Shown piece by piece: positions 9,807-24,769 of a stretch of 64,000 bases of DNA. Made by a program: the position numbers and the translations under genes. Numbering within the stretch: position 1 is the first letter of the stretch; each line of letters starts with the position of its first letter. The DNA comes from Selaginella moellendorffii. Lineage: Eukaryota; Plantae; Lycopodiophyta. The notes under the pieces were generated by a model. It worked only from the letters and a program-made list of their open reading frames with translations. It did not search any database and was not told the DNA's origin. The stretch lies in the NCBI RefSeq assembly GCF_000143415.4, contig NW_003314262.1, positions 1,725,960 to 1,789,959 on the forward strand, given 5' to 3'.

Positions 9807-12800
9807 TGGAGGGACCTTGCGCGAATAAGTTAGTGACCCCTCCATCTTTCTTTCGAGAGTATCATCAAGGGGTTCACTCGGCACCGGTTCATCCAGTGTT
9901 TACTTTCCAAGCTCGTTTTTATAACAAGAGGTCTCCTATTCTTCTCTCCGTGTTGGTTGATACAGGTTCGAGTTTATCTTCTATTGCTCGACCTGTTGCC
10001 ACACGTTGTCGTCTACACTTGCGTCGTGCGGCGGATCCAGTTTTCATTCTTTATGGCAACGGCCGTACACATGCATGTGCACGAGATGAGGCGGACCTGG
10101 TTGTGCGTGTGGGCGATCTCGAGTTTGAGTTGCAGTCGTTGCGGGTGGTGCCGAGTCAAGCTTTTGACCTCATTCTTGGTATGGATTGGTTGCAGCACAA
10201 TCATGCCAAGTGTGACTTTGAGGCTTTTCCCCCTTGTCTCATACTTCCTTATGTTTCATCCATTCCTCTCACTTCTGTACCTCTTCGTCCCTCTACTTCT
10301 ACCTCTGCTTCCATTACTTTTGTTCCCCCATTATTTCCTCTTGTGTTTCCATCTTGTTCTGCTCTTCCCTTTTCCGATCCCTCCAATGATCTTTGTGTTG
10401 CAGCTGTTGACCAGCTCATGAAGGAGTATTCTGATCTCTTTGAATTTGACCTATCGTCTGGGGCCAAGATTGCCACACGTCATCCCATTCCAACCGGGGA
10501 TGCTCGTCCAATCAAGGTTCCTGTTCGTCGTCGGTCACCTAAGGAGATCAAGATTTTACGTGCAAATGTCAAGGAGATGTTGGAGAAGGGTGTTATTCGG
10601 AAGTCGCGGAGTCCTTGGGCATGTGAACCTCATCTTGTGACGAAGCCTGATGGGAGTATTCGTTTCTGCATCGACTATCGTCCGTTAAATGAAGTGACGA
10701 TCCCGGACGTGTACCCTCTTCCTCACACTGCTGATCTCTTGGATCGTCTGGGGCGAAGTCGTTGGTTCACCAAGCTAGATCTTGCTTCTGGGTATTGGCA
10801 AGTATCGATGGCTGAAGACGATATTCCTAAGACTGCTTTTCGTACACCATTTGGTTTGTACGAGTTTTTGGTGATGCCGTTTGGTTTGAACAATGCTCCA
10901 GCAACTTTTCAGCGAATGATGGACGAGGTTCTTTGCGATATGCCGGAGGTGACGGCTGACTTCATTGATGATGTCTTGATCCACTCGGAGGGGACGTGGG
11001 AGGAGCATGTTCGTGATGTTTGTAAAGTGTTGGATCGGCTACGCGACGTTGGTTTAAAGCTGAAGCGGTCGAAGTGCGTGTTTGGGTCCAAGGACACAAC
11101 TTATCTTGGATACCGTATTTCTCGTGAGGGTTTGCAAGTTGATCCTGACAAACTTGTGGCTGTTCTAAAGTTCCCTACTCCGAAGTGTGTGAATGATGTG
11201 CAGCGTTTTTTGGGTAAGGTGCAGTATCTCGGTCGTTTTGTGGATCATCTTTCCGATCGTACTTTACCATTGCGAGCGTTGCTGAAGTCATCAACGTCAT
11301 CTTTCATCTGGTCTCCCGATTGTGAGCGGGCGTTCGTGAATCTCAAAGAGCTATTGACGACTCCTCCGGTTTTGGCATATCCTGACTACACTCGACCTTT
11401 TATTTTGCGCGTGGATGCTTCTGACATTGGTCTTGGAGGTGTGTTGATGCAAGAGAGCTCGAGTGTGCCTGGTCAGCGCCATCCCATTGCATACATAAGC
11501 CGTACATTACAACCAGCGGAGATGAACTACTCCACGACGGAGAAGGAGTGTTTAGCAGCAGTCTGGGGTTTCGAGAAACTTCATGCCTATCTACATGGTT
11601 CTCGGACGTTACTTGAAGGTGACCATGCTGCTGTTACTTCATTATTGAAGCGAAAGAACCTGGTTGGTCGTACGGCTCGATGGGCTTTGAAGCTTCAGAT
11701 ATATGATTTCGATGTTGTTCATCGCCCAGGGAGTTCTATGGCTGATGCTGATGCCCTTTCTCGAGCTCCTCTTCCTTCTCCACTCACTTCTCATGTTTCT
11801 GACGAACCTGTTGTTCCAGCATCTGTGGATTTTCTAGATGAGGATTCTGTGCTGTCGACGGTTGCTGTCCTTGACGTTCAGTGTCCACAGGGCGTAGAGC
11901 AAGATCTACCTTCTCTGGATGAGGTTCGCGAGGCTCAAAAGATTGAGCCGTGGATTCGAAGGCTTCGAGATGGGTTTGAGAATCCTGCATCACTTGCTGA
12001 TAACTTGCCTTTTCGGCATTTACATTCTCAATATCGCCTTGAAGATGGCCTTCTTTATTTTGTGGGGACGGATCCTGATGCTCATTTACGGCTGGTGGTG
12101 CCTTCGGTGTTTATTCCGCGGTTTCTCCATGCCTACCATGATTCTCCTATTCTAGGTGGGCATATGGGACACCGTCGTGTCACCGAGAAGTTGCGCAGAT
12201 CTTTCTATTGGCCAGAGATGCGACGTGATATTATCCGGTATGTGCGTAGCTGCGTTTGGTGCCAAGCTCGTAATACTCCCCCTTATGCTGCGGAAGGACG
12301 GTTGGAGTCAATTGCAGTTTCTCGTCCGTTTGAGTTGGTGGCGTTTGATCTTATGGGACCTTTTCCGCGATCGACTGCTGGCAATGAGTATGTTATTATT
12401 GCTTCTGACTACTTGACTCGTTGGGTGGAAGTTGGTGCTCTTGCTAGTGCCTCTGCAACTGCTGTTGGATACTTCCTCCTCAATCGAGTGGTGTTCCAGC
12501 ATTCTTGTCCAGAACGGATTCTTTCGGATAATGGTCCTGCATTTATGGCTGAGGTATTTCATGTTTTGACATCTCGGTTGGGGATACGCCACACTTTTAC
12601 GAGTGCTTATCATCCACAATCAGACGGTCTGGTGGAACGGCTTGTTCGGACATTCAAAGGGATGATTGCGAAGTATGTGAACTTTCAACATTCGGATTGG
12701 GATGGTTATTTGCCGTCTCTTCGGTATGCTTATGTCACAGGGGTGCAGAGTTCTATTGGTGCTTCACCATATAAACTTCTATATGGTCATGATCCAATAT

Positions 12801-18578: not shown

Positions 18579-19802
18579 TATTTGTATGAAGTTCATGCGG
18601 CATGAATTACGCCTCCCCTTTGTAGTCAGTTAAGGACCAGACTACTCCCACTTTCACAGCTTTTCTCCATGCTCGCCCTCAATTAGTAGAGCAAGGCCTT
18701 AGTCGAGCAACTTCTTACTACCAAGAATAAGCTCAAGGTGGCCATCCACTCCAAAGTTCTTAGTTCAATCCTCTTTTCTCCTAGACAACTTGTTCTTCTC
18801 AAGGAATTCACTCCCTCCTACTTCTGAATACTGGACCTTCTTAAAGAACAAGGTGGTCTAAAGTACCCCTCTTCTCCATGGAAAGAGATGAGGAACACAC
18901 GATCTCACCTTCGTCAACAGGCCATTGTATATCCAAACACACAGAATACTCAGCTGACGGTTCTGGGGATTGACGTTCTCCGTTCTCTGCAAAGCAATAC
19001 GACAAGCAGTAGAGGATGTATTGCAGACAACGAGATGCTGAAGGGCCGGCTCAAAGTAGCCTGGGAACACAGTTACTCCTATGCGATGAGCAGCTTTGTC
19101 GAAGATGACTGCAATGAAGTACTTGGTGTGGTCCCTGAATCTGCCCACCATTGACATGCACGCCTGCTCTAGACCCTGCAAACAAATACTATCCAATCAA
19201 CTGTAAAAGACTGTGCTAAAACACATGCCAAGGCAGCAATTCGCGTTCCAAGAGCAGCAGCGATCGATGTACAAGTCAAACACGGCTGGTATGATATATT
19301 ACCATATCAGTGTCCTCAAGATTCCCCTGCAGTTCTGAGATCCACAACCAAGTCACAGTGGTGTTTTGTATCGTTTTATCACCGAACCACAAGGCGATGG
19401 TGATACAACGACAACCACCCACAACTAAAACCCTTTCGTTCTTGTAAAAACTACGAACCAGAACTCCAGTATTTTACTTTCTGACATGAACAGTTGAAAT
19501 TCAATCGAAAACCAAACCACAATTATAGGTAGCTGAACATTTGAGCCTGGGCAAGCACTCGATCAATTCAAAGGCTGACTTTACTTACTGAGAAAAGAAG
19601 CACTCCTGTTCCAAAAAGCGGGTGGAGAAGTTGACAGATCTCGTTGGCTGCTGAGATTGCAGCTAGTGCTACGCTCTGAAGTCTACCTTTGTCACATCAT
19701 GAACAGTGGGGCTTTCACAGTTCGCGATCTCACCGTGCAAACTTAGGGTTTATTGTACTTGCGTAAACCCTAAACAGGATGCCCTAAATTAAACCCTAAA
19801 CC

Positions 19803-20625
19803 CTAGGACACCTGAATCTCGACGGGTTTCTTGGCCTCGATCTTCTTCTTGGGCACCGTCACGTAGAGCACGCCGTCTTTCAGCTCCGCCGTGATCTTGT
19901 CCACCTCCACATTGTCCGGGATCATCACCCTCGACTCGTAAGACCCCACGCTTCGCGCCGCCCATTTGTCGCCCCCTTCCTTCCTCTCCTTGCTCGTCTC
20001 GCCCTTGATCAGCAAGAAGCCATCGTCCACGATCGATACCTTCACCTCGTCCCTGGCGAGCCCGGGCATGTCCACACGCATCCTAAAGGCCTCCTCGTCC
20101 TCCATCACGTCCCACGGCAATCGCCCGGAGCTCCGGCGCTGGATCGTGGGCAGCATCGATGGCGCCGGCGTCGGCATCGCTCCAGTCTCCAGCATTTGAT
20201 TCATCGCGTCGAGCATCTGGCCGAAGCTCCTGGACGCCGGCATGAATGGATCCCACAAATCTGTGAAGAGAGAGAGGCATTCGCGATTTCTAAGAATCAG
20301 TCCGGGAGAGAGATTTCGATCGGAGATTCTTACCCAGCGGCGAGAGGGGCGAGGATTGTCTTCTCGATGCCATCGAGGGCCTTTGCTGCTGCTGTTGCTG
20401 CTGGGGAGGGGAAGAGGATCCATTCGTTCTCTGGAGCTGCTGGGGCGAGGATTGCTGCTGGTGGATCTTGATGCTGTTTTGATCCGGCGCTGCCGACGCT
20501 CTAACGCGCAATCGCCTATCGCGAGCGCACGGCCTGGCGCTGGAGCGGCGATTGCCTGGCCGAGAACAAACCCTGGTAATCGCTGGAGGAGCGCATAGAG
20601 CTAGAGGATTAAACACCAAAGCCAT
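19803..20625 (-). CDS. HSP21: Plastid-type small heat shock protein (HSP21-like), one intron (~20262-20332)
   Basis: Transit peptide; Met-rich WDPF..RSFGQMLDAMNQML region; alpha-crystallin domain RVDMPGL..ITAELKDGVLYVTVPK. Confidence 0.92.
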
Positions 20626-20660
20626 TGTTCTTGGATACTCACCCAGTAGCCCTCTCCGGC

Positions 20661-20776
20661 ATTTAAATGGAGAAGAAACGAAGGCTCTAGAGATCTCTAG
20701 TTACTCAACCACGTGGCAGAATCTGGGACGTGCAAAATGCCAGGTCAGAATTCCTGCCACATCGACGGCCACGTCA
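20661..20776. promoter_or_regulatory. Shared sHSP/trihelix-NMNAT promoter: TATA-like ATTTAAAT, imperfect HSE GAAggCTCtaGAGatCTC (20680-20697), G-box CCACGTGG (~20709) and GCCACGTCA (~20768)
   Basis: Motifs seen in the 241-bp gap between divergent ATGs at 20625 and 20867. Confidence 0.5.
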
Positions 20777-20866
20777 GGATTGCTTTGTTCTGGGCTCGAT
20801 TCCCGTTAAACCCCACAAAGCAAAAATATTTCTTCTTTTAGGGTTTTTTCCCCGAAGCTCCGAGCT

Positions 20867-22891
20867 ATGGCGGGTATGCTTCCCAGCCCGCTGAAGTTCG
20901 CGCCCTCGGAGGAGGCCAGCGTCGCCGCATTCGATCCCGCCGATCTGGAGGATCCATCCGTGAGCCTGGGCAGCTTCTCCAGGGATTTGGGGGCGGCGGG
21001 CAATCACCAGCAGCAGCATCACCAGCATCATCCGGCAGCGATGGAGGAGGGGCTCGGCGGCGACGAGATCGACAAGACGGAGAGCGTAGGCAGCAAGAAG
21101 AAGCGGGCGGAGATGTGGCAGGACTCGGAGATGGACGCCCTGGTAAGCGCTTACAAGCAAGTCCACATGAAGCTCCTCCTGGCCGGGAAGAATGGCAAGC
21201 ACGTCTTCAAATCCGCCAACGAGAAGTGGACCGAGGTGAGGAATTTGCTGCTGCCGATGGGCGTGGATCGGCAGCCCAAGGAGATCGAGCGAAAGTGGTC
21301 GAATCTCTTGACGGCCTACAAGCAAATCGTGGAGTGGAACAAGAAGATCGGGCATCCCAGCTACTGGGAGCTGGACGATGTTCTTAAGAAGGAGAAGACC
21401 AAGGCCAAGGAGCTCCCGGCGACGTTTAGAGTCCAGTTGTTTGAGAGCATGGCGGAGTTTCTCGGGGATAGGAATGGAAGGAGGGCGCGGTGCTTGGATC
21501 CAAATGGAGCTCCCGGGAATGGCAACTCCACCATGGCTGGGAACTCCACGGTTGCTGGGAACTCTAGCAGCAGTTCCTTGTCTCGGTTTGAGATGGCTCT
21601 AAGTACGTTGCGAGTTCTTCCATTTCTTTCTTTTTTTTCGCTTTTCTTTCGTTTTTTTTTCGTTCGTTTTCATTCGGTTCATTCTGCTTATAAGATTTGC
21701 AGGTCATGTCGATGTTCCAATCTGCTTGGACAAGCTCGGGAGCCAGCTGATACGAAACTTGGATGGCTCTTTGCGGTGAGAGTTTCAGTCTCTTTTTGAT
21801 CGCTCTTAGCAGCTGGGTTTTGTTGGTTTTGCCAGGAGACCGGGTGTGATTCTCGTTGCCACCGGAAGCTTCAATCCTCCGACGATCATGCATCTTCGAA
21901 TGTTTGGTATGTCTTTCCAGGCTTTCGTAGTTTACATTCACTTTTTTTTTGTTTCATTTTCTAGAGAGCTCGCCAGGAACTTACATTCGGTTTTTCGTTT
22001 TCTATAGAGCTCGCCAGGAACCGTTTGATGTCGGAGGGATATAGCGTACTCGGCGGTTATATGTCTCCTGTTCACGACGGATATGCAAAGCCTGTAGGTT
22101 CTTCTCCAAACATCGATGTTTCTTAACTCGCTGTTCGTCTTCCAGGGGCTGGCTCTAGCTGAGCATAGAATACAAATGTGTCAAATCTCTACAGCAGACT
22201 CGCCATTCATCATGGTTGATAGCTGGGAGGTAAAAAAATGGTTTTTTTTTCTTTGGTCTTCTCATGTTGACGCTTAAGTTTCCTTTAGGCGAGGCAACCA
22301 ACACGTCAACGAACTGTCGATGTTCTAGCTAGAGTAGATCACTGTATCAATGGCGGAATGATCACTGAAGGTCAGCGACTGATTGATTCTTTTTGCGTTT
22401 CAAGGAACTGAAGTAAACGTCTGTCACGCTACGCAGGAACCGTAAGGATAATGCTGCTTTGCGGAGTTGATCTCCTCGCAACTTTGGAAGACGCAAGCAT
22501 CTGGATCCCGGATCACGTAGAGCGAATCTGTCGAGACTACGGGATCGTCTGTCTCAGCAGGGACGGACAAAGCATCGACAAAGTCGTCTTCCAAAACGAG
22601 ACTTTGCACAGACACCGAGTAAGCTCCCAGCAGTCTTCTCATTCTCTTGTCATGGTTTTGTGTTCTCCGGAGATTTTGCAGAGAAACATCCTGGCTATGG
22701 AAGACATGGCACAGATCGGCGTAAGCTCCACAATCGTCAGGTGAAGAAAAATCACTCTTTTGTCTCTAAAATCTCTCGTTTTCTTTCTTCGCAGGCAAAG
22801 CTTCGAGAGGGCACTGTCGGTGAAGTATCTAGTTCACGATGGCGTGATCGAATACGTGAAATCTCACAGGCTTTACAACTACAGGGAGTGA
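20867..22891 (+). CDS. NMNAT: Trihelix (Myb/SANT-like, SH4/ASR3-type) DNA-binding domain fused in frame to nicotinamide/nicotinate mononucleotide adenylyltransferase
   Basis: Exon 1 20867-21602: W.DSE...L..A, KW.EV, R...EIERKWSNL...YK, SYW.L..LP..F. Intron 21603-21702 joins to HVDVPICLDKL..VATGSFNPPTIMHLRMF, GGYMSPV.D.Y, EHR..MC, MLLCG.DLL, WIPD.V..IC.DYGIVC, SST.VR..LSVKYL..DGVI.Y. Confidence 0.88.
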
Positions 22892-22939
22892 TAGCGAAGG
22901 TATCACTCTGTGTGTCAAAGAAGGAAGAAGAAGCATTGA

Positions 22940-24769
22940 TTATGAGAGATGGTGATGATCTTTCTCCTTGTATATATTAAACATGGTCTTGAGGGGCGCG
23001 GCATTACTGGGATCTAGATCGCCCATCTCTCCACTGGATCTCTCGCCGCGATCCAGATCGCGCTGGGTCCTCGACGCCGTGAGCAGCGATCCCCAAGCGG
23101 TGTCCCCGGGGAGGAATGGCATGCTCTCGACGAGCTCCTCGGCATCGGCCAATCGCCCAGCGCGCGCGAGCCCATCCACGACGCAGCAGTAATGCTCGCG
23201 AACTGGGGCGAGCCCGTGATCGCCGATCATGGAGACGAAGAACTCGATCGCGTCCTCCAATCTCCCCACCCGGCTCGCGGCGCTCAGCACGCTCGAGAAT
23301 GCCGCCTCGTCCGCCCTGAGCCCCTCCAGGCTGATGATCCACACGAGATGGATCGCCTCTCGCGCGAAGCCATTGCTCGCGAACGCGGCGGCCATCGCCG
23401 TCCAGGAGATGCGATCCCGGACTGGCTGGGTGTCGAATATCCGCTTCGCCTCGAGGATATTCCCGTTGTCGGCAAATGCCGCGGCCATCGCGGTCCAAGA
23501 TACCACGTCCGGCTCGGGCAGGGAGTCAAAGAGAATCTTTGCCTGCCGGATATTCCCTTGCTGGGAATATGCTGTGATCATGGTCGTGCACGCCGCGGGG
23601 CTTGGGAAGGGAATCTGGGCGTAGATACGCTTTGCTGACTCTAGATCCCCCATTAGGGCATTTGCGGTAAGAAGGGCATTTGCTGAGACGATGTCGAATT
23701 GGGGCATGGAATCGAAGACGCGACGCGCCTGCTCTAGCAAATTGTTCTGGGAATATGCCCGGACCATGGCGGTGTAGGAGAGGGAGTTCTTCTCTGGGAT
23801 GCGGTGGAATATCCACTCCACGCCCTCTACGTTGCCGACCTGGGCGTGCGCGGAGAGAAGCGTGTTCCAGGCTAGGGTTGTGTGCATTGGCATTCGATCG
23901 AAGAAATCCTGCGCGTCGTCCGGCCGCGCGCGGTGCGTGTGCGCTGAGATCATCGAGTTCCACGACACGGCATTGCGCTCGGGCATCGCATCGAAGAGCG
24001 CGCGGAGGCGATCGAGGTTCCCGGCTAGGGTATTTGCGGCGAGCATCGCGGTCCAGGAGACGACGTCGCGCTGCGGCATCCGATCGAAGAGGCTGTCCGC
24101 AGCATCCAGCTCGCCGGATCGAGCGTAGGCCGTGACGAGCGAGTTCCAGGTGATTACGCTGCGCCGCGGCATCGCATCGAACATGGATCTTGATATTTCA
24201 AGATCCCCGAGCTGGGAATAGGCCGCGATCATCGAATTCCAGGTACAGATGCTCTTCTTCTCCATCCGATCGAAGAGCTGCCGCGCCTGATCCAGCTCCC
24301 TGGCGTGGATGTAGGCCGCGATGATCGTGTTGTAGGCGACGGTGTCGGGCGAGGAGATGCGATCGAAGAGCCGCCGCGCCTCGGCGATCTGCCCGGCTTG
24401 GGCGTAGGCGCGGAGCATCGTCGTCCAGGTAACCACATCTGGCTCGTCCATCTTGTCGAAAACTTCCCTCGCTCTCTCTAATCTTCCATTCTCTGCGTAG
24501 GCCGCGATGATCAAGTTCCAGGAGAAGGAATCTCTCTGGTACTTGTTCACGAATACCTCCCAGGCCTGATCGAGCGCGCCGCATTTGCCATACAGGTAGA
24601 TCAGCCGGTTGAGGAGGAAGGGCTTCTGGCGGATGCGAGCATTGGCGAGGATCTGGTCGTGGAGCCGCTTGGTCTGCGAGAGATTGGGCTTGATCGCCGC
24701 GCATCGCAGCTCCTCGAGGAGCTGGTCGTGGCGGAGGGAAGCCCTCGTGACGGGCTGCAAGATCTTCAT
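22940..24769 (-). CDS. PLS-class pentatricopeptide repeat protein with C-terminal E-type domain, no DYW (likely organellar RNA-editing factor)
   Basis: Intronless 609-aa ORF; repeated A..LFD.MP.RDVVSW.AM motifs; HYCCVVDGLARAGRL..AEEL..SMPF.P...WGSLL. Confidence 0.95.
   Translation of the reverse strand: MKILQPVTRASLRHDQLLEELRCAAIKPNLSQTKRLHDQILANARIRQKPFLLNRLIYLYGKCGALDQAWEVFVNKYQRDSFSWNLIIAAYAENGRLERAREVFDKMDEPDVVTWTTMLRAYAQAGQIAEARRLFDRISSPDTVAYNTIIAAYIHARELDQARQLFDRMEKKSICTWNSMIAAYSQLGDLEISRSMFDAMPRRSVITWNSLVTAYARSGELDAADSLFDRMPQRDVVSWTAMLAANTLAGNLDRLRALFDAMPERNAVSWNSMISAHTHRARPDDAQDFFDRMPMHTTLAWNTLLSAHAQVGNVEGVEWIFHRIPEKNSLSYTAMVRAYSQNNLLEQARRVFDSMPQFDIVSANALLTANALMGDLESAKRIYAQIPFPSPAACTTMITAYSQQGNIRQAKILFDSLPEPDVVSWTAMAAAFADNGNILEAKRIFDTQPVRDRISWTAMAAAFASNGFAREAIHLVWIISLEGLRADEAAFSSVLSAASRVGRLEDAIEFFVSMIGDHGLAPVREHYCCVVDGLARAGRLADAEELVESMPFLPGDTAWGSLLTASRTQRDLDRGERSSGEMGDLDPSNAAPLKTMFNIYKEKDHHHLS

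What the first reader, a model, noticed from the sequence alone, without database searches (positions are those of the whole stretch)
20867..22891. Trihelix DNA-binding domain fused in frame to the NAD+-synthesis enzyme NMNAT
Seen: the trihelix exon ends ..FEMAL A|GTACGT (phase 1) and a 100-nt pyrimidine-rich intron ends TTTGCAG|GT CAT, giving ..FEMALSHVDVPICLDKL. The position of the angiosperm start (MDVPLP..KL) reads VDVP, so NMNAT has no ATG of its own there and no room for a separate promoter. NMNAT catalytic motifs look intact. Known: angiosperm NMNAT is a stand-alone enzyme; in animals NMNAT1 is recruited to chromatin to supply sirtuins and PARP; bacterial NadR fuses an HTH to an NMNAT domain. 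Inference: a hard-wired, DNA-targeted NAD+ synthase or an NMN/NAD-sensing transcription factor, a eukaryotic analogue of NadR.
Basis: partly seen in the sequence, partly recalled or inferred. Interest (0 to 1): 0.82.

Follow-up and report, generated by a model that had tools for sequence, protein, structure and literature searches.

The report
Trihelix–NMNAT fusion gene, ancient in plants
This plant gene really does make one spliced message joining a DNA-binding (trihelix) domain to the NAD-pathway enzyme NMNAT. The same fusion is present in mosses, liverworts, conifers, Ginkgo and a green alga, was found in no flowering plant, and I found no paper describing it.

Summary
A nine-exon, all GT-AG gene on the + strand (20867-22891) encodes 489 aa: a disordered N-terminus, a trihelix domain, a variable linker and a complete plant-type NMNAT.

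- **No separate NMNAT start.** NMNAT has no start codon of its own at the junction.
- **RNA support.** Exon-only contigs from four studies splice out all eight introns, including 21602>21703. Two contigs run from the trihelix exon through every NMNAT exon. Two runs also hold an intron-1-retained form with a premature stop.
- **Not unique to this genome.** The architecture occurs in Physcomitrium (4 proteins), Sphagnum, three liverworts, Cryptomeria, Ginkgo, Taxus, Picea and the alga Spirogloea. All listed angiosperms are unfused.
- **Shared origin.** The junction intron has the same position and phase in a liverwort, a moss and this window.
- **Constraint.** The DNA-binding domain is more conserved (61-79% identity among land plants) than the enzyme (43-55%).

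Function is untested. I favour an active, nucleus-targeted Na/NMNAT tethered to specific DNA that couples NAD-pathway status to transcription, in the manner of NadR or BirA. Local NAD supply to chromatin is the main rival. Ten scanned-literature searches found no description.

The parts
20800..20866 (+). 5' untranslated region (minimum extent)
   Evidence: The longest RNA contig (run X4, 2589 nt) begins at 20800. A low-depth X1 contig reaches back to 20714. Contigs cannot fix the true transcription start.
20867..21602 (+). Exon 1 (aa 1-245 plus the first base of codon 246): disordered N-terminus, trihelix domain and linker. It has no stop codon before the splice donor.
   Evidence: Gene model. 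The donor is CTCTAA|gtacgt, phase 1. RNA contigs cover the exon in all 4 runs.
21098..21499 (+). Trihelix (Myb_DNA-bind_4) DNA-binding domain, aa 78-211. It includes the KKKR basic arm, three helices with W84/W121/W144, the invariant recognition helix KEIERKWSNL, and a fourth helix (FRVQLFESMAEFL).
   Evidence: Pfam E 1.5e-10. Invariant columns across 27 homologues. Match to the GT-1 DNA-binding domain 2JMW at E 0.004. AlphaFold2 model folded at aa 81-200 with pLDDT up to 97. Identity to land-plant homologues is 61-79%.
21500..21602 (+). Low-complexity linker (aa 212-245), not conserved
   Evidence: Identity to homologues is 4-26%. pLDDT is below 50. The equivalent linker in the Physcomitrium homologue is also disordered.
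21603..21702 (+). Intron 1, the fusion junction: 100 nt, GT..AG, phase 1. It is sometimes retained.
   Evidence: The joint 21602>21703 appears in 4 of 4 runs. Retained contigs (21575-21732) appear in X2 and X8. The intron has the same position and phase in Marchantia paleacea and Physcomitrium. The retained form gives a 326-aa ORF with a premature stop.
21703..21775 (+). Exon 2, the NMNAT N-terminal segment (SHVDVPICLDKL..). It is homologous to the angiosperm start MDVPLP..KL.
   Evidence: joint.
21836..21906 (+). Exon 3, carrying the ATP-binding signature GSFNPPTIMH (nt 21864-21893)
   Evidence: (CTP_transf_like start); joints.
22008..22093 (+). Exon 4 (NMNAT)
22146..22229 (+). Exon 5 (NMNAT)
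22289..22370 (+). Exon 6 (NMNAT)
22437..22618 (+). Exon 7 (NMNAT)
22682..22740 (+). Exon 8, carrying the second signature VSSTIVR (nt 22721-22740, completed by nt 22795)
22795..22891 (+). Exon 9 coding part, ending with stop TGA at 22889-22891
22892..22980 (+). 3' untranslated region (extent not fixed). It overlaps the 3' end of the convergent PPR gene.
   Evidence: RNA contigs run on past the stop codon. The PPR ORF on the minus strand ends at 22940.

Best explanation
**What is shown.** This is one gene. It makes one spliced mRNA and one 489-aa protein with four parts: a disordered N-terminus, a trihelix DNA-binding domain, a flexible linker and a complete Na/NMNAT enzyme domain. It is the lycophyte member of an old family. 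The same architecture occurs in liverworts, mosses, gymnosperms and a zygnematophyte alga. The junction intron is shared by this gene, a liverwort and a moss. Flowering plants have only the enzyme part, starting at a Met that gymnosperm fusions already carry just after the junction.

**What I infer about how it works.** The enzyme domain is catalytically active. In bryophytes I found no other NMNAT. The KKKR arm plus trihelix domain takes the enzyme into the nucleus and binds it to a specific, conserved DNA motif. NMNATs are oligomers, so the enzyme core would make the DNA-binding domains multivalent.

I think the most likely role is an enzyme that doubles as a transcription regulator. In that model, occupancy of the active site by NaMN/NMN, ATP or NaAD/NAD, or the oligomeric state that results, modulates DNA binding and so couples NAD-pathway status to gene expression. 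This is the logic of bacterial NadR, BirA and PutA. Regulated retention of intron 1 may lower the output of the full protein.
For: **Shown**
- The gene model has nine exons, all GT-AG, and one open frame.
- All eight introns, including 21602>21703, are removed in RNA-like contigs from 4 runs in 4 studies. X4 (2589 nt) and X1 (2121 nt) contigs run from the trihelix exon through every NMNAT exon.
- There is no in-frame ATG for NMNAT at the junction.
- Pfam assigns Myb_DNA-bind_4. The NMNAT motifs are intact, and the region aligns over its full length with NMNATs whose homologues match solved structures (9RPK at 1.8e-84, human 1KQN).
- PF13837+PF01467 proteins were found in Physcomitrium (x4), Sphagnum (x2), Riccia, Marchantia paleacea, Calypogeia, Cryptomeria, Ginkgo (x2), Taxus and Spirogloea. 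Picea's cDNA-derived protein (P0002) carries the trihelix joined only to the NMNAT start, and Pfam does not assign PF01467 there.
- Uninterrupted fused ORFs lie on ~2-kb transcript contigs of other species.
- The junction intron has identical position and phase 1 in Marchantia, Physcomitrium and the window.
- Identity to land-plant homologues is 61-79% for the trihelix, 43-55% for NMNAT and 4-26% for the linker.
- The recognition helix KEIERKWSNL is invariant in 27 sequences.
- No stand-alone bryophyte NMNAT appeared in a search where it would have ranked at the top.
- The unfused angiosperm clade (99/100 support) groups with fused gymnosperm sequences (93/92).
- The AlphaFold2 model of the moss homologue shows two folded domains joined by a disordered linker, pTM 0.46.

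**Inferred:** nuclear location, DNA binding, enzyme activity and ligand-dependent regulation.
Against: - No experiment or dataset here bears on localisation, DNA binding, catalysis or regulation.
- Contigs cannot exclude an additional internal transcription start that would give an NMNAT-only protein from M243 (MALSHVDVP..). In run X8 the NMNAT contig is deeper (46) than the trihelix contig (21.8).
- Whether this genome also has an unfused NMNAT could not be tested.
- The window's NMNAT sits on a long branch (0.99) and has diverged at several otherwise conserved places.
- The Spirogloea trihelix is only 24-25% identical to the land-plant ones, so that fusion might be independent.
- Annotations of a clubmoss (Diphasiastrum) and a fern (Adiantum) are unfused, with no trihelix exon within 10 kb upstream. 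The distribution in vascular plants is therefore patchy or incompletely annotated.
- The structural match of the trihelix model to GT-1 is weak (Foldseek E 0.66, prob 0.85).
Confidence: 0.55

Rival explanations
1. Chromatin-local cofactor supply. The trihelix domain parks an active NMNAT at particular loci so that NAD+ (from NMN) is made where PARPs and sirtuins consume it. Human NMNAT1 recruited to promoters works this way. There would be no sensing or regulation by the fusion itself.
For: The fused architecture, conserved DNA-binding domain and intact catalytic motifs fit this as well as they fit the best explanation. The animal precedent (NMNAT1 with PARP-1 and SIRT1) is from my own knowledge. 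A nuclear NMNAT1 salvage route in mammals is summarised in PMC12178909.
Against: The plant Na/NMNAT prefers NaMN and yields NaAD, which needs NAD synthetase to become NAD+. The 2025 review finds no evidence for nuclear NAD recycling in Arabidopsis (PMC12178909). PARP and sirtuin reactions release nicotinamide. From my own knowledge, land plants recycle it through nicotinamidase and NaPRT rather than to NMN. A tethered NMNAT alone would therefore not close a local cycle.
Confidence: 0.2
2. The fusion is real but there is no functional coupling. The trihelix part serves only as a nuclear import or retention tag, or as a partner-binding module. Alternatively the polypeptide simply carries two independent jobs kept together by history.
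For: The linker is long, disordered and not conserved, and no fixed inter-domain packing is predicted (pTM 0.46). Angiosperms dispense with the domain altogether.
Against: An import tag needs only the KKKR patch. Instead about 130 residues, including the whole recognition helix, are more conserved than the essential enzyme across liverworts, mosses, this window and gymnosperms. Among the 26 significant hits, every one with a named source organism was a non-flowering plant. Those Pfam marks as trihelix only include ORF calls that read into the junction intron, as P0001 and P0004 do. The domain therefore seems to have stayed with NMNAT.
Confidence: 0.18
3. The NMNAT domain has lost catalysis and serves only as a ligand-binding or chaperone-like module of a transcription factor. 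Another gene supplies NMNAT activity.
For: The window's NMNAT is on a long branch and differs at several conserved positions, for example SPVHD for SPVND and KP for KK. A second NMNAT in this genome could not be excluded.
Against: Both nucleotidyltransferase signatures are intact (GSFNPPTIMH, VSSTIVR). In bryophytes every NMNAT found is fused, so the fused form must carry the essential activity there.
Confidence: 0.05
4. These are two separate genes or mRNAs that only look joined: an annotation or assembly artefact, or a read-through chimera of no consequence.
For: Logan contigs are k-mer assemblies, so a contig across two genes does not prove one molecule (caveat printed). An intron-1-retained form exists.
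Against: The splice joint 21602>21703 itself joins the two parts, in 4 of 4 runs from 4 studies. The trihelix frame has no stop before the donor, and NMNAT has no ATG. The same join, with the same intron position and phase, is found in at least 13 other named species, including transcript contigs with uninterrupted ORFs.
Confidence: 0.02

Closest known systems
Angiosperm Na/NMNAT (Arabidopsis At5g55810-type; PDB 9RPK)
   Same: The enzyme part is orthologous. A Marchantia fused homologue matches 9RPK at 1.8e-84 over its whole length. The window's aa 246-489 align throughout, with the same N-terminal (M/V)DVP..KL segment and both signature motifs.
   Different: The angiosperm protein is 238-255 aa and starts at the Met that lies two codons after the junction codon in gymnosperm fusions. 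It has no trihelix domain. No trihelix exon lies within 10 kb upstream in Amborella.
Trihelix (GT-factor) transcription factors, e.g. Arabidopsis GT-1 (PDB 2JMW/2EBI)
   Same: The Pfam family is the same (Myb_DNA-bind_4). The KKRAE-W start, the three conserved tryptophans and a fourth amphipathic helix are all present. GT-1 is the only significant solved relative.
   Different: This is a separate subfamily for which no angiosperm member was found in the length range searched. It is fused to an enzyme instead of carrying activation or dimerisation regions.
Bacterial NadR (HTH + NMNAT + ribosylnicotinamide kinase)
   Same: A DNA-binding domain sits N-terminal to an NMNAT-fold domain in one polypeptide. 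This is the precedent for NAD/ATP occupancy of that domain controlling DNA binding (my own knowledge).
   Different: NadR has a different DNA-binding fold (HTH, not trihelix) and a different NMNAT lineage (the window's is of the eukaryotic NMNAT1-3 type). The window's protein has no kinase domain and ends with NMNAT. The origin is independent.
Human NMNAT1 (PDB 1KQN)
   Same: It is a homologous enzyme, nuclear, and reported to act at chromatin with PARP-1 and SIRT1 (my own knowledge; nuclear salvage route in PMC12178909).
   Different: NMNAT1 reaches chromatin through an internal nuclear localisation loop and protein partners, not through a built-in sequence-specific DNA-binding domain.
Enzyme-repressors BirA and PutA (bacteria)
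   Same: They follow the same logic as proposed here: a metabolic enzyme with its own DNA-binding domain whose catalytic state sets promoter occupancy (my own knowledge).
   Different: The folds and pathways are unrelated, and they are prokaryotic. This is an analogy only.
Other trihelix-enzyme fusions noted by this scan in the same genome
   Same: An N-terminal trihelix domain is joined in frame to a metabolic enzyme: isocyanide hydratase, beta-ureidopropionase and an amidohydrolase (AI notes that I did not check).
   Different: The beta-ureidopropionase fusion was reported there in no other organism searched; no spread was reported for the others. The NMNAT fusion is conserved from bryophytes to gymnosperms.

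Membership tests
Eukaryotic NMNAT (Pfam CTP_transf_like, PF01467) | N-terminal nucleotidyltransferase signature GxFxPx(H/T)xxH | tested here: met
   GSFNPPTIMH at aa 280-289. It aligns with the invariant G/F/P/P/T/H columns of 17 homologues. The exon-3 fragment alone hits the PF01467 start weakly (E 0.028).
Eukaryotic NMNAT (Pfam CTP_transf_like, PF01467) | C-terminal ISSTxxR-type signature | tested here: met
   VSSTIVR at aa 452-458.
Eukaryotic NMNAT (Pfam CTP_transf_like, PF01467) | Full-length homology to NMNATs of solved structure | tested here: met
   The window's aa 246-489 align end to end with fused homologues at 43-55% identity. One of these (P0031:455-699) matches 9RPK at 1.8e-84 and human NMNAT1 at 7e-57. 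The spliced window protein itself could not be submitted, because it has no reference.
Eukaryotic NMNAT (Pfam CTP_transf_like, PF01467) | Adenylyl transfer to NaMN or NMN | not testable with these tools
   Needs an enzyme assay or complementation.
Trihelix / Myb_DNA-bind_4 (PF13837) | Profile match above the curated cut-off | tested here: met
   41.7 bits against a cut-off of 27, E 1.5e-10, aa 83-170.
Trihelix / Myb_DNA-bind_4 (PF13837) | Three helices each carrying the conserved tryptophan, plus a basic N-terminal arm | tested here: met
   W84, W121 and W144 are invariant in 27 sequences, as are K78, R80 and A81. Helices are predicted at 86-112, 117-131 and 137-159.
Trihelix / Myb_DNA-bind_4 (PF13837) | Fold like the solved GT-1 DNA-binding domain | tested here: inconclusive
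   Sequence match to 2JMW/2EBI at E 0.004. In Foldseek, 2JMW ranks 2nd with prob 0.85 and TM 0.62 by target, but E 0.66.
Trihelix / Myb_DNA-bind_4 (PF13837) | Sequence-specific DNA binding | not testable with these tools
   Needs EMSA or DAP-seq.
Plant trihelix-NMNAT fusion family (database entries only; I found no published description) | Domain order: trihelix, then linker, then NMNAT, in one ORF | tested here: met
Plant trihelix-NMNAT fusion family (database entries only; I found no published description) | Phase-1 intron three codons before the D of the (V/M)D(V/I)P segment | tested here: met
   Window 21602|21703, Marchantia paleacea L001 3363|3761 and Physcomitrium L002 2712|2973 all share phase 1 and the same codon.
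Plant trihelix-NMNAT fusion family (database entries only; I found no published description) | The fused mRNA is actually made | tested here: met
   for this gene; for two other species.
NadR | N-terminal HTH (XRE-type) DNA-binding domain | tested here: not met
   The DNA-binding domain is Myb_DNA-bind_4; no HTH family was reported.
NadR | C-terminal ribosylnicotinamide kinase (P-loop) domain | tested here: not met
   The protein ends about 30 residues after the NMNAT signature, and homologues end at the same place.

The most novel reading that the evidence does not exclude
In non-flowering streptophytes the only NMNAT is itself a sequence-specific transcription factor. It would be a eukaryotic one-component enzyme-regulator, in the manner of NadR or BirA. 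It would read NaMN/NMN, ATP or NaAD/NAD at its active site and set the expression of a conserved target regulon, for example NAD-pathway or stress genes. Flowering plants would have dismantled this circuit when they lost the trihelix exon.
Probability: 0.27. Interest if true: 0.85.

Novelty: new variant of a known kind. Interest (0 to 1): 0.7.

Why it matters
NMNAT is the one step shared by all routes to NAD. Where NAD is made in plant cells, and how the pathway is regulated, remain open questions. A 2025 review states there is no evidence yet for nuclear NAD recycling in Arabidopsis (PMC12178909).

Here, the NMNATs found in liverworts, mosses, this lycophyte and gymnosperms carry a built-in DNA-binding domain that is more conserved than the enzyme itself. 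Models built on Arabidopsis would miss this layer entirely.

The hypothesis is directly testable in Marchantia and Physcomitrium by domain deletion, localisation, and DAP-seq with and without pathway metabolites. It also offers a clean case of gene-architecture change (loss of a fused domain) at the base of flowering plants. Finally, it adds an old, conserved example to the trihelix-enzyme fusions that this scan keeps finding in this genome.

Tried and rejected
- **Organism and annotation lookup.** Looking up the window's own ORF product (P0001) in the assembly index, to name the organism and its annotation, found nothing on record. The organism name (Selaginella moellendorffii) comes only from earlier AI notes. 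It fits the 52-101-nt introns, but I did not verify it.
- **Second, unfused NMNAT in this genome.** This was not possible. Only the window is available, the spliced protein has no reference to submit, and the third homologue search was swamped by angiosperm hits. No other lycophyte entry appeared apart from Diphasiastrum.
- **Upstream trihelix exons.** A tblastn search of the 10 kb upstream of the unfused Diphasiastrum, Amborella and Adiantum genes found none. Introns in these genomes reach 5-52 kb, so absence is not proven for the clubmoss and the fern.
- **Literature.** Nine full-text searches and two papers read gave no description of the fusion. Two of the searches were too loose to be informative.
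- **Structure and atlas searches.** Foldseek on the trihelix model gave only weak matches. The ESM Atlas feature search gave generic Myb_DNA-bind_4 clusters below 0.9.
- **Promoter motifs.** I looked for GT-element-like motifs in the gene's own promoter as a hint of autoregulation and found none. With a single promoter this says little.
- **Big representative search.** I did not use it. It returns no taxa or names, so it could not settle the absence claim for angiosperms.
- **Rejected reading: leaky scanning to M243.** Nine in-frame ATGs, and more out of frame, precede it, so an NMNAT-only product would need an internal promoter.
Full report
**1. The observation**

I read 19800-24500, translated all three forward frames and built the gene model.

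- The + strand carries nine exons: 20867-21602, 21703-21775, 21836-21906, 22008-22093, 22146-22229, 22289-22370, 22437-22618, 22682-22740 and 22795-22891.
- Every intron is GT..AG and 52-101 nt long. The joined CDS is 1470 nt, giving 489 aa.
- Exon 1 ends ..CTCTAA|gtacgt in phase 1. Intron 1 is exactly 100 nt, T-rich, and ends tttgcag.
- In the NMNAT frame, the DNA upstream of exon 2 runs back to a TAA at 21600-21602 without an ATG. The next in-frame Met (M288) lies inside the catalytic motif.
- The trihelix frame has no stop before the donor.
- Pfam places Myb_DNA-bind_4 at aa 83-170 (E 1.5e-10, above the curated cut-off).
- The NMNAT part carries GSFNPPTIMH (aa 280-289) and VSSTIVR (aa 452-458).

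**2. Is the join made in RNA?**

The run search returned about 20 runs from 9 studies that hold 0.51-0.57 of the sampled words of 20750-23000. That share is what exons alone would give. I laid four runs from four studies on 20200-23400.

- All four show all eight joints at exactly the predicted places, including 21602>21703 (GT..AG, skipping 100 nt).
- In X4 a single 2589-nt contig runs from 20800 through exon 1 and all NMNAT exons. In X1 a 2121-nt contig does the same from 20941.
- These are contigs, so they do not prove single molecules or fix the transcript ends. The joint itself, however, links the two coding parts.
- X2 and X8 also contain a contig that reads straight through intron 1 (21575-21732) at lower depth. 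With the other introns removed, that isoform gives a 326-aa ORF ending in a premature stop five exon junctions before the end. It is therefore a likely decay target, or at best a trihelix-only product.
- In X8 the NMNAT contig is deeper (46) than the trihelix contig (21.8). This could reflect 3' bias, the overlapping convergent gene or an extra internal start. I cannot tell which.

**3. Relatives**

*Trihelix search.* I searched with the trihelix exon. The query was lengthened by the intron read-through so that proteins of 170-542 aa were admitted, and only aa 1-245 were scored. It found 26 proteins.

- Those with a named source organism are all non-flowering plants. Several carry PF13837+PF01467: Physcomitrium patens, Ginkgo and Taxus. 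So do the unnamed transcript contigs P0003 and P0024.
- Hits marked trihelix-only include plain ORF calls on genomic DNA that read into the junction intron. The window's own P0001 does this, and so does P0004, whose tail diverges right after ..SG.

*Long NMNAT-bearing proteins.* A second search (292-927 aa) added these fused proteins:
- Cryptomeria (568 aa)
- Riccia (700), Marchantia paleacea (699) and Calypogeia (767)
- two more Physcomitrium proteins (604, 677)
- Sphagnum fallax (607) and S. balticum (425)
- Spirogloea muscicola (465)

A second Spirogloea entry starts inside the trihelix domain. Angiosperm, fern (Adiantum), Mesostigma and chlorophyte entries carry PF01467 only.

*Stand-alone-sized relatives.* A third search used the Marchantia NMNAT domain (134-425 aa). 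It listed angiosperm stand-alone enzymes of 238-275 aa, including Amborella and Nymphaea. The top hit was a 270-aa Diphasiastrum protein. No stand-alone bryophyte NMNAT appeared, although one would have ranked first.

*Transcript evidence elsewhere.* Two Logan contigs of about 2 kb (SRR8442501; SRR14893986/88) carry the fused ORF uninterrupted. They are therefore spliced transcripts of other species.

**4. One origin**

I mapped the junction in genomic loci.

| Species (locus) | Exon 1 end \| exon 2 start | Phase | Residues around the join |
|---|---|---|---|
| Marchantia paleacea (L001) | 3363 \| 3761 | 1 | ..SS-G-IVDIPLP |
| Physcomitrium (L002) | 2712 \| 2973 | 1 | ..AP-G-VVEVPLP |
| Window | 21602 \| 21703 | 1 | ..AL-S-HVDVP |

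The codon position and phase are the same in all three.

- Gymnosperm fusions read ..G-S-MDVPLP at this place. They already carry, two codons after the junction codon, the Met with which angiosperm NMNATs start.
- Amborella has a pyrimidine-rich ..catcttag|GTACT ATG at the homologous spot. This looks like the old acceptor surviving in the 5' UTR. That reading is an inference.
- Diphasiastrum has a 19-codon first exon and then an intron at the same place.
- No trihelix exon lies within 10 kb upstream in Diphasiastrum, Amborella or Adiantum. Introns there are long.

A maximum-likelihood tree of the NMNAT domain (35 rows) largely follows the species tree.
- The unfused angiosperms form one clade (99/100). 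It groups with fused gymnosperms and the fern (93/92).
- Liverwort and moss fusions form their own starred clades.
- Ginkgo-b plus Sphagnum balticum form a second, older paralogue (83/91).
- The window's sequence sits on a long branch (0.99) and is unresolved.

The simplest reading is a fusion at or before the origin of land plants, followed by loss of the trihelix exon in the angiosperm stem lineage. The Spirogloea trihelix domain is only 24-25% identical to the others, so I leave open whether that fusion is the same event.

**5. Constraint and shape**

- Against 17 land-plant homologues, the window's trihelix region (aa 78-211) is 61-79% identical. NMNAT is 43-55% identical and the linker 4-26%. 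The same ranking holds between liverwort, moss and conifer.
- In a 27-sequence alignment, K78, R80, A81, W84, W121, the whole stretch K138-L147 (KEIERKWSNL) and E176-K179 are invariant.
- The only significant solved relative of the domain is the Arabidopsis GT-1 DNA-binding domain (E 0.004). Foldseek ranks it second, but weakly.
- AlphaFold2 on the window's exon 1 gives a confident helical domain at aa 81-200 and disorder elsewhere.
- On the 487-aa Physcomitrium homologue it gives two folded domains, a disordered N-terminus and linker, and pTM 0.46. No fixed packing of the two domains is predicted.

**6. How it probably works**

Shown: one gene, one frame, one mRNA, an ancient family, and both domains under purifying selection with the DNA-binding domain the tighter of the two.

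Inferred:
- The enzyme is active. Its motifs are intact, and it is the only NMNAT found in bryophytes.
- The KKKR arm and trihelix domain place it in the nucleus on a specific DNA motif.
- The oligomeric enzyme core makes the DNA-binding domains multivalent.

I favour an enzyme-regulator that couples active-site occupancy to DNA binding, following the logic of NadR, BirA and PutA.

The main rival is local cofactor supply to chromatin enzymes, as proposed for human NMNAT1. I rate it lower for two reasons. The plant enzyme prefers NaMN and makes NaAD, which still needs NAD synthetase. The 2025 review also finds no evidence for nuclear NAD recycling in Arabidopsis (PMC12178909).

A mere import tag does not explain an invariant recognition helix. 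A dead enzyme does not fit the bryophyte data. Two separate mRNAs are excluded.

**7. Known or new**

- Fused proteins are present in public databases. UniProt names the Physcomitrium ones simply as NMNAT.
- Nine full-text searches and two papers read gave no description of the fusion. Subscription literature is not covered.
It does have notes on other trihelix-enzyme fusions in this genome, which earlier agents identify as Selaginella moellendorffii (not verified by me).
- I class the finding as a new variant of a known kind: an NMNAT with a built-in DNA-binding domain, analogous to NadR but not a member of that family.

**8. Limits**

- The spliced 489-aa protein has no reference, so it was analysed only in scripts and through its exons and homologues.
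- A second NMNAT in this genome, the transcription start and all functional claims remain untested.

Noticed in passing
window 21575-21732 (intron 1, 21603-21702): An intron-1-retained RNA form is present in 2 of 4 runs (depth 19.4 retained against 27.3 spliced in X2; 7.8 against 11 in X8). It would encode a 326-aa trihelix-only protein with an out-of-frame tail and a premature stop. This may be regulated unproductive splicing.
   Followed up: partly
window 19803-20625, minus strand: An HSP20 (small heat-shock protein) gene lies head to head with the fusion gene. It has an intron at 20261-20333 that is spliced in all four runs, and very high contig depth (up to 1522). The shared ~240-bp upstream region holds a G-box (CACGTG at 20710), a 15-nt palindrome (TCTAGAGATCTCTAG at 20686) and two ACGT cores.
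   Followed up: partly
window 22940-24769, minus strand: A 609-aa PPR protein gene converges on the fusion gene. The two stop codons are 49 nt apart, so the 3' UTRs must overlap. RNA contigs run from NMNAT straight into it.
   Followed up: partly
window 21965-21980 and 22006-22021: Intron 3 contains a 16-nt exact copy (about 26 nt in the near-identical block) of the acceptor and first bases of exon 4. This looks like a small tandem duplication offering a decoy acceptor. Only the downstream site was seen used in RNA.
   Followed up: partly
window 22864-23345: Runs X4 and X8 (X8 is labelled as a different organism) carry many substitutions and small insertions in the 3' UTR and PPR region, but almost none in the coding exons of the fusion gene. 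The cause could be another haplotype, strain or close species.
   Followed up: no
P0018 (Ginkgo, 434 aa) and P0057 (Sphagnum balticum, 425 aa): These two form a second, shorter and more divergent fused paralogue group (83/91 in the NMNAT tree; trihelix 61-65% identical to the window). The fused gene seems to have duplicated very early.
   Followed up: partly
P0002 (Picea sitchensis D5A8W4, 478 aa): This cDNA-derived protein has the trihelix domain and the NMNAT start up to ..MHLRMF. It then switches to a hAT-dimerisation-domain tail (PF05699). It is probably a transcript spliced into a transposon.
   Followed up: no
L004 (Amborella) 9990-10003: An acceptor-like ..catcttag|GTACT precedes the NMNAT start codon, at the position homologous to the fusion-junction acceptor. 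It may be a relic of the lost upstream exon.
   Followed up: partly
L003 (Diphasiastrum) 9985-10060: The annotated first exon of the clubmoss NMNAT is only 19 codons long and is itself preceded by ..tcttctgcag. The model may lack upstream exons, so its 'unfused' status is uncertain.
   Followed up: no
same genome, other pieces (earlier notes s1-382078, s1-341416, s1-353460, s1-344435): The scan has noted several other trihelix domains fused to enzymes in this genome: isocyanide hydratase, beta-ureidopropionase, an amidohydrolase and an AAA ATPase. Together with the NMNAT case, this suggests a recurrent trihelix-plus-enzyme theme worth a joint analysis.
   Followed up: no
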